A stretch of 26,076 nucleotides of DNA from Octopus sinensis. Taxonomy: Eukaryota. Under the pieces are notes generated by a model. That model made no database searches. It was not told the origin of the DNA and saw only the letters and a list, made by a program, of their open reading frames with translations. This document shows, in pieces, positions 12,718 to 15,531 of this stretch. The stretch lies in NCBI RefSeq assembly GCF_006345805.1, contig NW_021835603.1:1-26076 (forward strand), written 5' to 3'. Within the stretch, counting starts at the first letter, position 1; the number at the start of each line of letters is the position of its first letter. A program made the translations under genes and the position numbers.

Positions 12718-15531
12718 AGCCAGTTCCTCAAAGGGCCCCAGGATACTTTGACCTCCGGTCCGGTTCCTGGGCCAACCTGGAGAGGTTCATGGCCAGCAGG
12801 TTGCCCTCACTCCTGGGGGGGAATACCTGCGCCACAATACGAGAGTGGAGGCGTTAGATAATGGAATCAATGCTGCCCTGTCTGATTATATGCGAGATAA
12901 TTTCAAACAGAACCCAGTACAGGGCAGGCACATTCCACGCTCCCGTACCGGGTGCTAAATAAAATTAGATTCAAGCGCCGGCTGTCCAGACTGCGGGACA
13001 AATGCGTCTACCAGGAGAACCGTGTCTGGTTTCGCGGCTGGATCAGCCGGCTTCAGTGGGGGATCCGGAGGGAAAATCCGTGAACACGAAAGTTCACGGT
13101 GGGAGCGGGCCTGCCAAAGAGTGGACCCGCGCTTCCGGACTTCTGGAAACAACTGAAGAGCCTGTCGGGGAGAGGGGAGGCAAAGTCAGTGCGCCTTAAG
13201 CGCTCTGATGGAACCCTCGCCTCGGACCCGGTTGAGGTGGCTGATATATTTTAACCCACCTCAACAACATCTCGGGAACTGACGGAAGTCAATTCGTAGA
13301 GACGTCGTCTTTGTTACTATCCAGGAGGTATTGTCTTGGGACAAGCGCTGCCAGCTGGACATATCAAGGGTCGATGCAGGCGAAGTTTCCGAAAGGGAGA
13401 TCCTGGCAGCGATCTCCCGAAGTAAGAACACCGCGGCGGGGCTAGATCGGATCCCTATGTCCATCTTCAAAAAGGCCCCGCCGTTGTTGATCACGGCCTT
13501 ACAGGTTTTGTTTAGCGGGAGCTTGCGACTTGGATGATTCCTTCCAGGTGGGAAGTGGCTGAGGTAATCCTCATTGGAAACCTGGAAGCCTCATGATGTC
13601 CCCGGGGGATACAGGCCCATTTCCTTGCTTCCCGCTATATCTAAAATCCTAGAAAGGATCATGCACCGAAGGCTACTGGAGGAGCTGACGGTGGTTGACG
13701 CCCTCCCGGAGTTCAATGGGGCTTCAGGGAGGGTCGTTCATGTGGAGACTGCTTGTGGAAGGTGTCTTCCGAAATGAAGAACGCCCTCCAGAAAAGGGAG
13801 TGTGGTATGTTAGTTAGTCTTGACATAGAAAAGGCCTTCGACTCGGTGTGGCACGACGGCCTGCGGAGTTCCCTCGCCACGTGTGGGGTTTCTCCGTGTC
13901 TAAGGCGCTGGCTGTCGGGGTTCCTCGAATCTCGCGGTCAGGTCTTGCGACACCAGGGGGTCTTTTCTAAAGTCGAACAGTCCTCGCGGGGTCCCTCAGG
14001 GTTCTGTGCTGAGTCCCACACTGTTTAATATCTTTATGGCCTCTGCACCTATGCCAGTCAATGCTCGTACTGGAATGGTGATCTATGCAGACGACATTAT
14101 CCTCTGGGATCAGTCGATGAAACCAGAGTGTGCGTGTCGTAGGCTAAGGTTGCTGTGGATGAACTTGTAAACTGGTGTGGGAGTAGGGGTCTAAAGATGT
14201 GTGCGACAAGTGCAGTGTCCTTAAAGTCTGTAAAAGGACGAGGGGTTACACTAATTTTATCCCTAGGTTATCGCTGGACGGGTCAGCGATCGCTGTAGTT
14301 GATCGGACAACTTACTCTTGCAAATTTTGTGGATAATGGCACCTAAAGTTGCACACAAAGGGACAAAAAAGAGAGCTCCCATTAAAACAAAAAAATTTCC
14401 ATCGCTACAAAGAGACAACTGTCTGCACTAAGAAGGCTATGTCGAAGTGGAGGCGTTCCCGCTTCGCACTCCCCGGAGGACAAGACGGTTCAGTGTGCCA
14501 CTACGATGAACTGCGGAGCCGTGGTTACCGCCACGTGCTTCGGCTATTCTAGGGGTGTTTTTACTTCTTTAGGTCAAAGCAGGAGGTCGAAGCCTCGAAA
14601 TAATAAAATATGGCTAGAACAAAACAAACGGCTCGAAAATCTACTGGTGCAAAAGTACCAAGGAAACAGTTGTCTGCAAAATCTGCTCGCAAGCTGTCTG
14701 CACTAAGAAGACTATGCAGAAGTGGAGGTGTTCCCGCCTCGCTCTCCCAGAAGGACAAGACGGTTCAGTGTGCCACTACGATGAATTGCCGAGCCGTGGT
14801 TCACCCGCCACGCGCTTCGGCCTATTCTAGTGGTGTCTTTAATTTTCTAGGCGAAAGCAGGAAGGAGAAGTCGAAGCCTGGACCCTCCAGGTGGGTTCAG
14901 CACTCACTGGAGACACTTCTTCCTCTGCTCCCCCTATGGCTGGTGTCGGGGGAGCTGCAGGTGCAACTGGTTCTGATCGTTTGGTATCCAACCACCGCAC
15001 AGCATGCTGGTTCGCCACGTGTTTGCGGTTTTGTCTAGTGGTACCAAACCCAGCCTAGGTAAGTCAATTAATGCCAACAGGGTGTCGTCTCCTGAGGCCG
15101 TCCCGGTGGGTACGGCAGGAAATAAGGTTGCCCTTGAGGACGGTTGGTACACGGTGGGAAACCAAACGTGCGGCTGGCCGTCAACCCCCCTAATGTTTTT
15201 AGGTACTGGGGTGTGTGTCCGATCAGGCGGATGCACACCAAAGCGACCACTGGCGCCGGGGGGCCAGAATTACCTTCGGGTGCTGTGGCACGACTTGAGG
15301 TCCTCCCAAGTGGGAAGGCCTCGGTCGTAAAGATCCTAGGTACCTTGGACTCTATCCAGCCTTCAAAGCTGTATAGAGTCCTGAAGAGGGAGCCCACCCA
15401 ATTCCTGCTTGGTTGGAGAAGGAGGATGACTTCTCCAACTTCAAAGGGGAGTTGGAGAGAGAAGTCAAATCCGTTCGGTCCTGGCATGCATTCGCCTAGT
15501 CAGGATCGAACGTAAGGTAAGAAAGGTAAGG
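12718..15531 (+). mobile_element. 5'-truncated, degenerate jockey/I-like LINE (ORF2 linker, RT and C-terminus), internally chimeric
   Basis: Linker LPYRVLNKIRFKRRL...FWKQLKSL; RT motifs AAGLDRIP, YRPISLLPAISKILER, LDIEKAFDSVWH, PQGSVLSP and YADD (14084-14095); post-RT LSALRRL; a short gtaag-like tail at 15512-15531. Many frameshifts. Confidence 0.9.
14610..14693 (+). pseudogene. H3: Histone H3 N-terminal tail fragment (Met to K27) embedded in the LINE
   Basis: [28 protein letters not shown], then an in-frame switch into LINE sequence. No histone fold follows. Confidence 0.93.

What the first reader, a model, noticed from the sequence alone, without database searches (positions are those of the whole stretch)
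14419..15038. Histone H3 tail (up to K27) fused in frame to a LINE ORF2 C-terminal segment at a duplicated LINE junction
Seen: LINE segment A (14419-14595) is followed by 14 nt of AT-rich leader (cgaaataataaaat), then ATG and 28 codons of H3, then a second copy of segment A (14694-14879). By eye the two copies differ at about 10 of the first ~106 nt. The fusion gives a 142-codon ORF carrying K4, K9, K14, K18, K23 and K27 but no histone fold. The LINE resumes at ctgtctgcac, which resembles both the tgtctgca inside the H3 piece and the Ser-Ala codons expected after K27. Known: non-LTR RTs template-jump and make chimeras with cellular RNAs (R2 template jumping, U6-L1 chimeras). Inference: this is capture of an H3 mRNA 5' end by template switching. 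If expressed, it would be an H3-tail mimic or decoy attached to a retroelement domain.
Basis: partly seen in the sequence, partly recalled or inferred. Interest (0 to 1): 0.8.

Follow-up and report, generated by a model that had tools for sequence, protein, structure and literature searches.

The report
Octopus LINE fused to histone tails
The H3-tail/LINE fusion is real, but it is a decayed copy of an octopus retrotransposon family living inside variant-histone gene arrays, whose first protein seems to borrow the start codon and N-terminal tail of histone H3, H2B or H4; I found no report of such an arrangement.

Summary
An ATG plus 28 H3 codons (14610-14693) reads in frame into a repeated LINE segment, giving a 142-codon ORF.

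The interpretation needs three corrections.
- The H3 piece is not canonical H3. It matches a multicopy Octopus sinensis H3 variant gene at 97 of 97 nt, leader included.
- "Segment A" is not the ORF2 C-terminus. It is position 1 onward of a ~4.46 kb LINE, and it codes for the N-terminus of ORF1.
- Copy A does not continue the upstream LINE. It is the start of a second LINE copy, fused to an H2B-variant 5' piece.

The same H3|LINE junction occurs at four or five other O. sinensis places, and the H2B|LINE junction at two. The consensus of six H3-LINE copies is open from the H3 ATG for more than 364 codons. One real H2B-LINE copy is open for 327 codons. An H4 fusion is also in frame.

All 14 LINE 3' ends sampled lie 9-57 nt upstream of a histone start codon, or next to an H2B-leader-like sequence.

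Best reading: a histone-array-resident LINE that uses histone promoters, ATGs and tails. The window copy is a truncated relic. A one-off template switch is poorly supported. Expression and genome-wide distribution remain untested.

The parts
12474..12653 (+). Array spacer or promoter region that normally lies just upstream of the H2B-variant gene
   Evidence: 91% identical to L016 4450-4629 and 13639-13820, which sit 27 nt upstream of the H2Bv leader in LINE-free units.
12708..14314 (+). Older LINE copy, 5'-truncated and 3'-deleted (LINE positions 2371-3989 of 4464: ORF2 linker plus RT, YADDIILW near 14085). It is inserted about 25 nt upstream of the H2Bv ATG. Its last ~480 nt (ORF2 C-terminus plus 3' UTR) are deleted.
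   Evidence: Frameshifted RT motifs in the three-frame translation. Pfam RVT_1 hit. 88-89% identity to several full copies, with all alignments ending at 14314. The intact continuation is seen in L005 2505-2987. The empty site is L016 4629-4657.
14317..14418 (+). H2B-variant leader (19 nt) plus first ~27 codons. In the window this is 83 nt instead of 81, so it is frameshifted.
   Evidence: 86-95% identical to H2Bv 5' ends in L014, L015, L016 and L013. In L015 the same piece reads MAPKVSTKGQKRAPIKTKNVSVATKRQ in frame into the LINE.
14419..14595 (+). It is cut off by a deletion that joins it to the H3 leader.
   Evidence: 95% identical to LINE positions 1-183 of L014 680-862. The H2B|LINE 27-mer is shared with L013 and L015. 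The junction to the H3 leader is unique to the window.
14597..14609 (+). Leader (-13 to -1) of the octopus H3 variant gene
   Evidence: Identical to L002 and L003 upstream of the ATG; homology to the gene starts at -13.
14610..14693 (+). Codons 1-28 (Met plus residues 1-27) of the octopus H3 variant ('H3.2-like', XP_029654011 and others)
   Evidence: 28/28 aa identical to P0004, P0005 and P0006. 84/84 nt identical to gene copies L002 and L003.
14694..15601 (+). LINE copy of subtype B, positions 1-902. This is the N-terminal coding region of ORF1. It is truncated at 15601 and carries many small indels.
   Evidence: 95% identical to L009 4169-3258, and 89-94% to five other copies. The consensus frame is open from the H3 ATG. 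Indel list.
14700..14733 (+). 34-nt H4-variant-like stretch at the LINE 5' end, read in the H4 frame (ALRRLCRSGGV versus H4v AIRRLCRRGGV, residues 33-43). The same stretch occurs in copy A at 14425-14458.
   Evidence: BLAST to the H4v gene in L004 1396-1429. 29/34 identical, and 0 of 1000 shuffles reach the score.
14610..15038 (+). The 142-codon ORF. Residues 1-61 and 66-93 follow the ancestral H3-ORF1 frame. The rest is out of frame apart from a short return before the stop.
   Evidence: Frameshifts lie at about 14790, 14804, 14886, 14990 and 15029.
1767..1930 (-). H2A-variant promoter, leader and codons 1-32, cut off after codon 32. It is a remnant of the same histone array.
   Evidence: tblastn E 2e-15 to H2Av. 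92-94% identical to L007, L009, L014 and L016.
24905..24977 (+). Second H2B-variant 5' fragment (leader plus about 17 codons)
   Evidence: 83% identical to 14325-14388. 84-93% identical to H2Bv 5' ends in L007 and L004.

Best explanation
The window holds a rearranged, decayed piece of an octopus variant-histone gene array that has been colonised by one APE-type LINE family.

The element. It is about 4.46 kb. ORF1 has CCHC knuckles. ORF2 (endonuclease plus RT) is 893 aa. The 3' end is ...AATAAATTTTT(C)5-7.

How full-length copies sit in the array (shown). Position 1 (CTGTCTGCAC) follows directly, and in frame, after codon 28 of an H3-variant gene or codon 27 of an H2B-variant gene. ORF1 is open right up to position 1. 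In subtype A it has no Met of its own for about 275 codons.

The most likely working mode (inferred). The LINE is transcribed from the histone promoter and translated from the histone ATG. This would give an ORF1 protein whose N-terminus is a histone tail. I suggest that the tail may help nuclear import or chromatin or chaperone contact.

Where 3' ends sit (shown for the loci sampled). New copies end just upstream of histone start codons, in sense orientation.

The order in this window (shown). Array spacer; an old 5'-truncated LINE whose 3' end is deleted; H2B piece; LINE-A positions 1-180; a deletion; H3 leader plus 28 codons; LINE-B positions 1-902, truncated.

What the 'duplicated LINE junction' is. 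It comes from two neighbouring LINE copies, H2B-LINE and H3-LINE, with most of the first one deleted at the DNA level.

Status of the window copy. It has no promoter next to it and a broken frame. It is almost certainly a dead relic.
For: Identity of the H3 piece:
- 28/28 aa and 97/97 nt match O. sinensis H3-variant genes.

Full-length element and domains:
- L014 680-5143 holds ORF1 and ORF2. Pfam gives RVT_1 at 1.6e-37, Exo_endo_phos hits, and a weak zf-CCHC hit.
- Segment A equals LINE positions 1-183 and 1-902.
- The true ORF2 C-terminus is different and is absent from the window.

Recurrence of the junctions:
- The H3|LINE 26-mer is in L009, L011 (same place as L002) and L014 twice, with a one-base variant at L014 13790.
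- The H2B|LINE 27-mer is in L013 and L015.

Coding evidence:
- The consensus of six H3-LINE copies has 0 stops in 364 codons from the H3 ATG.
- Over the 301 LINE codons in consensus A and B, the count is 0 stops in frame 0, against 13 and 18 in the other two frames.
- The only A/B indel is 6 nt.
- The real copy L015 981-1962 is open for 327 codons from the H2B ATG.
- H4v codons 1-54 are fused in frame to ORF1 in L010, and H4v codons 1-71 in frame to the RT in L009.
- An H4-derived 34-mer lies in frame at LINE positions 7-40.

Target association:
- Of 14 LINE 3' ends in 157 kb, 12 lie 9-57 nt upstream of an H4, H2B, H3 or H2A ATG in sense orientation. The other two adjoin H2B-leader-like sequence.

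DNA context of real genes:
- A native TATA promoter precedes the H3 piece in L014 19200-19322, and a native H2B promoter precedes the H2B piece in L015.
- An empty H2B site is seen in L016.

Youth of the family:
- Copies are 97-99% identical to one another, and ORF2 is intact in L014.
Against: - No transcript, protein or cap-site data exist. Use of the histone promoter and ATG is inferred only from the open frame and the lack of an internal Met.
- Ka/Ks between the subtype consensuses is uninformative: 0.55 in frame 0 and 0.54 in frame 1, from 31 differences.
- The first ~130 LINE codons evolve about six times faster than the rest. That stretch could be a weakly constrained leader rather than a needed protein part.
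- All six H3-LINE copies are broken in the assemblies; the ORF from the ATG runs 31-254 aa.
- All loci were picked because they carry H3-variant genes. Whether the LINE also lives elsewhere, or has another 5' end elsewhere, could not be tested, because ORF1 and ORF2 have no close relatives in the protein database.
- Array duplication and gene conversion may inflate the apparent number of independent events.
- A 5'-truncated copy has practically no target-site duplication. No single simple insertion model explains both the 3' ends at leaders and the 5' ends at codon 27/28.
Confidence: 0.6

Rival explanations
1. The LINE reverse transcriptase reaches the 5' end of LINE RNA, jumps onto a histone mRNA at an internal site (H3 +84, H2B +81, H4 +165 or +213) and copies it to the cap. 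It may then jump onto the 3' end of another LINE RNA. This would make chains of LINE | histone 5' piece | LINE. Recombination with native genes in the array would later move the junctions into gene context.
For: - Chains of exactly this form exist: L009 LINE 3' end | H3 -18..+84 | LINE position 1; L009 LINE 3' end | H4 leader..codon 71 | LINE RT; L010 LINE 3' end | H4 leader..codon 54 | LINE position ~174; and the window itself.
- Where a histone piece is bounded by a LINE 3' end, it starts within a few nt of the TSS predicted from the TATA box.
- Eight of 14 such junctions carry extra GG or GGA that is not in the native leader. From my own knowledge, extra G at the 5' end of retrocopies is ascribed to cap copying.
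- The LINE 5' end looks like stacked relics of earlier histone pieces: an H3 20-22-like 9-mer, then an H4 33-43-like 34-mer (sequence read).
Against: - The H3 piece in L014 (19200-19322) and the H2B piece in L015 continue upstream into native promoters and array spacing.
- Histone genes downstream of LINE 3' ends keep their native downstream neighbours.
- The upstream limit of the H3 piece differs among copies.
- The recurrent GGA, including before H2A where the A is not native, fits a templated LINE 3' terminus better than cap addition.
- In the window, the H3 leader is joined to a LINE 5' fragment, not to a LINE 3' end or a target site.
Confidence: 0.25
2. Accident plus amplification. A full-length LINE once landed in an H3-variant gene after codon 28, and another in H2B after codon 27. 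Both happened to be in frame. The disrupted genes were then copied by unequal crossing-over and segmental duplication of the array. The histone tail has no role for the element, and ORF1 starts elsewhere or by another route.
For: - Several junction copies share flanks and are clearly duplicates: L014 583 and 13694, L013 1751 and 17586, L009 7546 and 19823.
- The window ends are a 25-kb direct repeat.
- Mixed combinations of H3 type and LINE subtype fit gene conversion in an array.
- The N-terminal ~130 LINE codons are fast-evolving and Ka/Ks is not informative.
Against: - Four of four histone|LINE junctions are in frame, about 1% by chance.
- ORF1 is open to LINE position 1, with no Met for ~275 codons in subtype A.
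- Two different histones are joined to the same LINE nucleotide.
- All 14 of 14 3' ends adjoin histone leaders of all four core histone types, in at least 10 distinct junction forms.
- An in-frame H4 relic inside the LINE points to repeated fusion over time.
Confidence: 0.3
3. Assembly artefact. The junctions are chimeric joins made by an assembler in a repeat-rich region.
For: - The window-specific join, LINE-A position ~180 | H3 leader -13, is not found in any fetched locus.
- The window LINE-B copy has an odd excess of 1-2-nt indels, 18 against 20 substitutions. This suggests uncorrected long-read errors.
Against: - The H3|LINE and H2B|LINE junctions recur on several separate contigs of another assembly, with 5-11% sequence divergence between copies.
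- The copies carry coherent subtype-specific differences.
Confidence: 0.03

Closest known systems
Target-specific non-LTR retrotransposons of multicopy genes: R1 and R2 in rDNA, SLACS/CZAR/CRE in spliced-leader genes, NeSL, Keno and Utopia in U2 snRNA genes (families named from my own knowledge; Utopia and R2 papers PMC4640811 and PMC5035012 consulted)
   Same: The element lives inside a tandemly repeated host gene family, always in the sense orientation. Its 3' ends lie at a narrowly defined place in the host gene. It apparently depends on host transcription, since ORF1 has no start of its own.
   Different: The targets are protein-coding core-histone variant genes of all four types, not RNA genes. 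Neither paper mentions histone targets. The 3' junction nucleotide varies from -9 to -57 rather than being fixed. The element's ORF1 is fused in frame to the host protein's N-terminus. Exclusivity to the target has not been shown.
U6-L1 and other template-switch chimeric retrocopies; R2 template jumping (from my own knowledge)
   Same: A cellular RNA-derived-looking 5' piece is joined head-to-tail to LINE sequence. Chains of LINE | histone piece | LINE exist.
   Different: The LINE partner starts at its position 1 in nine of nine cases, not at random truncation points. The junction is multicopy. The histone piece can extend into the promoter. The chimeras sit in the source gene array, not at dispersed sites with their own target-site duplications.
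L1 5' transduction, meaning read-in from an upstream promoter (from my own knowledge)
   Same: Host sequence upstream of a full-length element behaves as part of the element's 5' end. In L014 583 and 13694 an H3 piece plus LINE lies upstream of an H2B gene, as if moved together.
   Different: Here the carried piece supplies the start codon and 27-28 codons in frame. Transport to new sites is not demonstrated, because the flanks were not clean.
R9 of bdelloid rotifers, a site-specific element with a 126-bp target-site duplication (from my own knowledge)
   Same: A histone 5' segment of about 100 nt (H3 -18..+84, H2B -25..+81) is bounded by a LINE 3' end on its left and a LINE 5' end on its right. 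A long duplication would produce that pattern.
   Different: No locus shows the same histone segment cleanly duplicated on both sides of one element. A 5'-truncated copy has ~0-nt duplication. The endonuclease type also differs: APE here.
Histone-tail mimicry by viral proteins, e.g. the H3-like ARSK motif in influenza NS1 (from my own knowledge)
   Same: A non-histone protein would carry an H3 N-terminal tail sequence with K4, K9 and K27.
   Different: Here the tail is the literal first 27 residues of a host H3 variant, acquired by gene fusion rather than a short convergent motif. No expression or binding data exist.

Membership tests
APE-type non-LTR retrotransposon (LINE) | Reverse transcriptase domain with the YxDD motif | tested here: met
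   RVT_1 at E 1.6e-37 in L014 ORF2. In the window, RVT_1 scores 1.1e-7 and YADDIILW is present.
APE-type non-LTR retrotransposon (LINE) | Apurinic-like endonuclease N-terminal to the RT | tested here: met
   Exo_endo_phos_2 at 7e-9 and Exo_endo_phos at 5e-7 in L014 ORF2. The window copies are too truncated to contain this domain.
APE-type non-LTR retrotransposon (LINE) | Frequent 5'-truncated copies sharing a common 3' end, and no LTRs | tested here: met
   Copies start at LINE positions 839, 1304, 1737, 2371, 2751, 3371, 3401, 3453, 3539, 3680 and 4038. All end at about 4464.
Histone H3 protein | Histone-fold domain (PF00125) | tested here: not met
   No Pfam hit for the 142-aa ORF. H3 codons 29-136 are absent from the window. 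Only the tail is present.
Template-switch chimeric retrocopy (U6-L1 type) | The cellular partner is limited to transcribed sequence, starting at the RNA 5' end | tested here: not met
   The H3 piece in L014 19200-19322 and the H2B piece in L015 continue into native promoters. The limit varies among copies. In the window itself the limit is -13, which is compatible but not diagnostic.
Template-switch chimeric retrocopy (U6-L1 type) | A single dead-on-arrival insertion at a random site, flanked by its own target-site duplication | tested here: not met
   At least seven junction copies exist inside the histone arrays. No flanking duplication was identified around the window structure.
Target-specific LINE of a multicopy gene | Insertions at a defined place and orientation in the host gene | tested here: met
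   All 14 of 14 3' ends are in sense orientation. Twelve lie 9-57 nt upstream of a histone ATG and two adjoin H2B-leader-like sequence. Nine of nine full 5' ends follow H3 codon 28 or H2B codon 27. The exact 3' nucleotide varies.
Target-specific LINE of a multicopy gene | Absent or rare outside the target | not testable with these tools
   Only loci next to H3-variant genes could be fetched. ORF1 and ORF2 searches found no octopus copies in the protein database.
Target-specific LINE of a multicopy gene | Co-transcription with, or dependence on, the host gene for expression | not testable with these tools
   Inferred only from the open frame from the histone ATG and the lack of an internal Met. 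No 5' self-cleaving ribozyme was detected by Rfam.

The most novel reading that the evidence does not exclude
An octopus LINE family is a dedicated resident of variant core-histone gene arrays. It integrates just upstream of histone start codons and has no start of its own. It expresses ORF1 as an in-frame fusion to the first 27 residues of H3, the first 26 of H2B, or the first ~54 of H4. Its RNA-binding protein therefore carries a genuine, modifiable histone tail, which might act as a nuclear-import, chaperone or chromatin handle. Its expression would be tied to histone-gene transcription. The stacked H3-like and H4-like relics at its 5' end would record repeated rounds of such fusion.
Probability: 0.45. 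Interest if true: 0.88.

Novelty: new variant of a known kind. Interest (0 to 1): 0.78.

Why it matters
- Target-specific LINEs are known for RNA genes and simple repeats. A family tied to protein-coding histone genes, reading its own protein from the host's ATG and tail, would add a new way for a retroelement to obtain a promoter and a start codon.
- The borrowed tail might also supply a nuclear or chromatin address.
- It would give a natural case of a histone-tail fusion on a retrotransposon RNP, which can be tested for import, chaperone binding and tail modification.
- It would show how a histone array tolerates such a guest. Intact H3, H2B and H4 genes sit directly downstream of LINE 3' ends.
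- For annotation, short 'histone-like' ORFs in cephalopod genomes may be LINE 5' ends.
- For this window alone, the practical result is modest: the copy is a broken relic.

Tried and rejected
- **Canonical H3 that decayed.** Rejected. The five differences from canonical H3 are all native to an octopus H3 variant.
- **Segment A as ORF2 C-terminus.** At first this fitted a generic post-RT motif by eye. It was rejected once the true C-terminus (L005 2505-2870) and the full element in L014 were seen.
- **The MAPKVAHKG... reading at 14336 as a chance out-of-frame reading of the LINE.** Rejected. It is an H2B-variant 5' end.
- **Segment A as a deleted H4 gene (codons 33-102).** Only a 34-nt stretch is significantly H4-like. 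The rest gives 6% of shuffles at or above the observed score.
- **Rest of the H3 gene after the LINE, as a simple insertion would leave.** Not found in the window. No LINE 3' end abuts H3 codon 29 in any locus.
- **Fixed ~100-nt target-site duplication.** Not supported. The 5'-truncated copy in the window has ~0 nt against the empty site. In L015 the right flank has only an H2B-leader-like 25 nt.
- **Clean 5' transduction in L014 583 and 13694.** The left flank is another TE fragment, not the empty H2B site. Inconclusive.
- **5' ribozyme that would define position 1.** No Rfam hit even at E of 1 or less. The fold z-score is only -2.0.
- **Ka/Ks between subtypes.** Uninformative.
- **Database look-ups.** The window ORF is not on record. 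ORF2 finds only 26-30% relatives. The ORF1 query finds nothing.
- **Literature.** Three full-text searches and two papers gave no histone-targeting LINE or histone-ORF1 fusion. This check is not exhaustive.
- **tRNA and Rfam scans of the window.** Empty.
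Full report
**1. Observation**

The window carries an ORF at 14610-15038 (+) of 142 codons. It begins [28 protein letters not shown] and then reads LSALRRLCRSGGV.... The first 28 codons match H3 by tblastn at E 1e-10, and nothing else of H3 is in the window. 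The segment after the H3 piece (from 14694) repeats 14419-14595. Identity is 91% over the first 108 nt and about 85% over 184 nt with small indels. The GC-rich block from 12.7 to 15.6 kb sits in ~30% GC DNA.

**2. Host and the H3 piece**

A protein search with the ORF found only histone H3 proteins. Three of them (P0004, P0005, P0006) are identical over all 28 residues. Two of these, P0004 and P0006, are annotated as 'histone H3.2-like' of Octopus sinensis; P0005 comes from an unnamed Logan run. The five differences from canonical H3 (A13, V15, S21, A22, S24) are therefore native to an octopus H3 variant, not decay.

At the DNA level, window 14597-14693 (13 nt of leader plus 84 nt) is 97/97 identical to gene copies L002 and L003.

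These H3-variant genes lie in arrays with variant H2A, H4 and H2B genes. In L007/L016 the unit is about 5.1 kb and reads H2A(-), H4(+), H2B(+), H3(+).

The window is itself a degraded copy of such an array. It holds:
- an H2A-variant promoter plus codons 1-32 (1767-1930, minus strand);
- array spacer (2357-2908 and 12290-12653);
- an H2B-variant leader plus 27 codons (14317-14418);
- the H3 piece;
- a second H2B 5' piece (24905-24977).

**3. What 'segment A' is**

Homology of the upstream RT-bearing LINE to other copies stops at 14314, inside the TY|LG motif. In L005 the element continues from that point with its true ORF2 C-terminus (...TYLGVLFKPSGKFDDHIARTKMRAMQRLGALRAF...GWQVRR*) and a 3' UTR ending ...AATAAATTTTTCCCCCC. 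None of this resembles segment A.

L014 583-5143 holds a nearly intact element:
- the H3 piece;
- then 4464 nt, starting CTGTCTGCAC;
- an ORF1 with CCHC knuckles;
- an intact 893-aa ORF2 with APE endonuclease and RT;
- the 3' end, followed directly by an H2B gene.

Mapped on this element, window 14419-14598 equals positions 1-183 (95%). Window 14694-15601 equals positions 1-902. Window 12708-14314 equals positions 2371-3989.

So segment A is the 5' end of the LINE, not an ORF2 C-terminal part. Copy A does not continue the upstream RT. It is the start of another LINE copy, joined to the H2B piece exactly as in L013 and L015.

The upstream LINE is an older copy (88-89% identical to the others). 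It is 5'-truncated and inserted about 25 nt upstream of the H2B ATG. Comparison with the empty site in L016 shows practically no target duplication. Its last ~480 nt were lost in a deletion that joined ...aactta to ctcttgcaaatttt of the H2B leader.

The join of LINE-A position ~180 to the H3 leader at -13 is found only in the window. It is best read as an internal deletion that removed most of LINE-A, from an arrangement like that of L013, which reads H2B piece - LINE - H3.

**4. Recurrence**

The exact 26-mer across H3 codon 28 and LINE position 1 occurs at L009 4153-4178, L011 9767-9792 (the same place as L002) and twice in L014. A one-base variant is at L014 ~13790. The 27-mer across H2B codon 27 and LINE position 1 occurs in L013 and L015.

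The copies differ by 5-11% and fall into two LINE subtypes (A and B) and two H3 gene types, in mixed combinations.

In L014 19200-19322 the H3 piece is preceded by the native TATA promoter and lies at the normal distance behind an H2B gene. In L015 the H2B piece has its native promoter. Elsewhere the H3 piece is cut at:
- -18 by another LINE's 3' end (L009);
- about -24 (L011);
- about -34 (L014 583 and 13694);
- -13 (the window).

**5. The LINE 5' part is coding and reads on from the histone ATG**

- The majority consensus of the six H3-LINE copies has one frame, that of the H3 ATG, with no stop for all 364 codons available. It runs into the ORF1 seen in L014.
- In subtype consensuses A and B, frame 0 has 0 stops in 301 codons against 13 and 18 in the other frames. 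The only indel between them is 6 nt.
- Subtype A has no in-frame Met for about 275 codons after position 1.
- One real copy, L015 981-1962, is open for 327 codons from the H2B ATG through the whole 5' part.
- In L010, H4-variant codons 1-54 are fused in frame to ORF1 at LINE position ~174. In L009, H4 codons 1-71 are fused in frame to the RT. So four of four histone|LINE junctions are in frame, about 1% by chance.
- LINE positions 7-40 are 29/34 identical to H4-variant codons 33-43 and are read in the H4 frame (ALRRLCRSGGV versus AIRRLCRRGGV). None of 1000 shuffles reach that score.
- By eye, the first 9 nt (CTGTCTGCA) resemble H3 codons 20-22 (TTGTCTGCA). On its own it is too short to be significant.

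Limits of this evidence:
- Ka/Ks between A and B is not informative.
- The first ~130 codons evolve about six times faster than the rest (26 of 31 differences).
- Every H3-LINE copy is broken in the assemblies.
- Many breaks are 1-2-nt indels. The window copy has 18 indel events against 20 substitutions, a ratio that suggests sequencing error as much as decay.
- L014's full copy needs only two 1-nt corrections to be open throughout.

**6. Where the 3' ends are**

A motif scan for the LINE 3' terminus in the 157 kb of fetched loci found 14 ends. Twelve are followed, in sense orientation, by a histone ATG within 9-57 nt:
- H4 five times;
- H2B three times;
- H3 three times;
- H2A once.

The other two are followed by H2B-leader-like sequence. 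At least ten junction forms are distinct. The histone genes behind them are intact and keep their array neighbours. The loci were chosen for carrying H3 genes. Even so, such leaders make up well under 1% of that DNA (my own rough estimate).

**7. Mechanism**

Shown:
- the anatomy;
- the recurrence;
- the open frame from histone ATGs;
- the position of 3' ends.

Inferred:
- The element is transcribed from histone promoters and its ORF1 is translated from the histone ATG, giving a tail-bearing ORF1 protein.
- A role of the tail in nuclear import or in chaperone or chromatin contact is my suggestion, based on general knowledge that core-histone tails act as import signals.

How the histone|position-1 junction forms is open. 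DNA insertion into real genes is supported by the promoter context. The chains LINE | histone 5' piece | LINE, and the near-TSS left ends of these pieces, would also fit template jumping onto histone mRNA followed by recombination within the array. A homology-assisted 5' join from a histone-LINE co-transcript, as proposed for R1 and R2 (my own knowledge), is another possibility.

No 5' ribozyme was detected.

The window copy itself lacks a nearby promoter. Its LINE is cut at position 902, and it keeps the ancestral frame for only about 93 of 142 codons. I regard it as non-functional.

**8. Comparison and novelty**

The closest known systems are target-specific LINEs of multicopy RNA genes and template-switch chimeras. 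The membership rows list which defining features were met.

Three full-text searches, plus targeted reading of two papers on target-specific LINEs, gave no case of histone-gene targeting or of a histone-tail-ORF1 fusion. This literature check is not exhaustive.

I rate the finding as a new variant of a known kind. Interest is high, tempered by three things: the absence of expression data, the sampling bias of the loci, and reliance on one draft assembly plus this window.

Noticed in passing
L009-L016 (157 kb of O. sinensis loci); listed: All 14 LINE 3' ends (...AATAAATTTTT C5-7, often followed by GG or GGA) lie in sense orientation. Twelve are 9-57 nt upstream of a variant H4, H2B, H3 or H2A start codon, and two adjoin H2B-leader-like sequence. 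The intact histone genes behind them are thereby cut off from their promoters.
   Followed up: partly
window 14694-14733 and 14419-14458; L015 1052-1101: The LINE 5' end looks like stacked relics of earlier histone fusions. CTGTCTGCA resembles H3 codons 20-22. The next 34 nt resemble H4-variant codons 33-43 and are in frame. In the H2B fusions, the 6 nt before position 1 (agacaa) resemble H3 codons 18-19.
   Followed up: partly
window 14694-15601: Relative to its subfamily consensus this copy has 18 small indels against 20 substitutions, mostly 1-2 nt in short runs. That is an unusual ratio and may reflect uncorrected long-read errors in the source assembly.
   Followed up: partly
L014 583-5143: A near-intact full-length element. 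ORF2 (893 aa) is open, and the H3-ORF1 frame is interrupted by only two 1-nt deletions. Several copies are 97-99% identical to it, which suggests recent activity or recent array duplication.
   Followed up: partly
window 1-991 and 25066-26076: The two ends of the window are a 97% direct repeat about 25.07 kb apart. The window therefore spans one unit of a large tandem or segmental duplication.
   Followed up: no
window 5024-6099: A 95-nt satellite with 11.4 copies at 92% identity, followed by an (ACAG)n run at 6125-6176. Related arrays (~79% identical) occur near the histone genes in L011 and L016.
   Followed up: no
window 1767-1930 (minus strand): An H2A-variant promoter, leader and codons 1-32. 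It is cut after codon 32 and continues into unrelated sequence that matches neither the LINE nor any fetched locus.
   Followed up: partly
window 24905-24977: A second short H2B-variant 5' fragment (leader plus about 17 codons) in AT-rich DNA, not attached to LINE sequence.
   Followed up: no
L014 570-600, 13680-13710, 19290-19320, ~9965-9990: A 13-nt string ctgaaactgtcct precedes the H3 leader in three different upstream contexts, including between the TATA promoter and the leader. Its origin is unexplained.
   Followed up: no
window 9348-9725 (+), 10861-11136 (-), 20503-21093 (-), 23372-24495 (+): Other content of the window: two pogo/Tigger-like DDE_1 transposase fragments, an unrelated RT fragment on the minus strand, and WD40-repeat exons of a host gene. 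A 119-nt inverted repeat (6452-6570 / 9714-9832) may mark a DNA transposon.
   Followed up: partly
L008 (Logan run ERR12370323, 2975 nt): Another organism, species not identified. It has the same four variant histone genes in a compact LINE-free cluster in the order H2A(-), H2B, H4, H3. This differs from the O. sinensis order.
   Followed up: no
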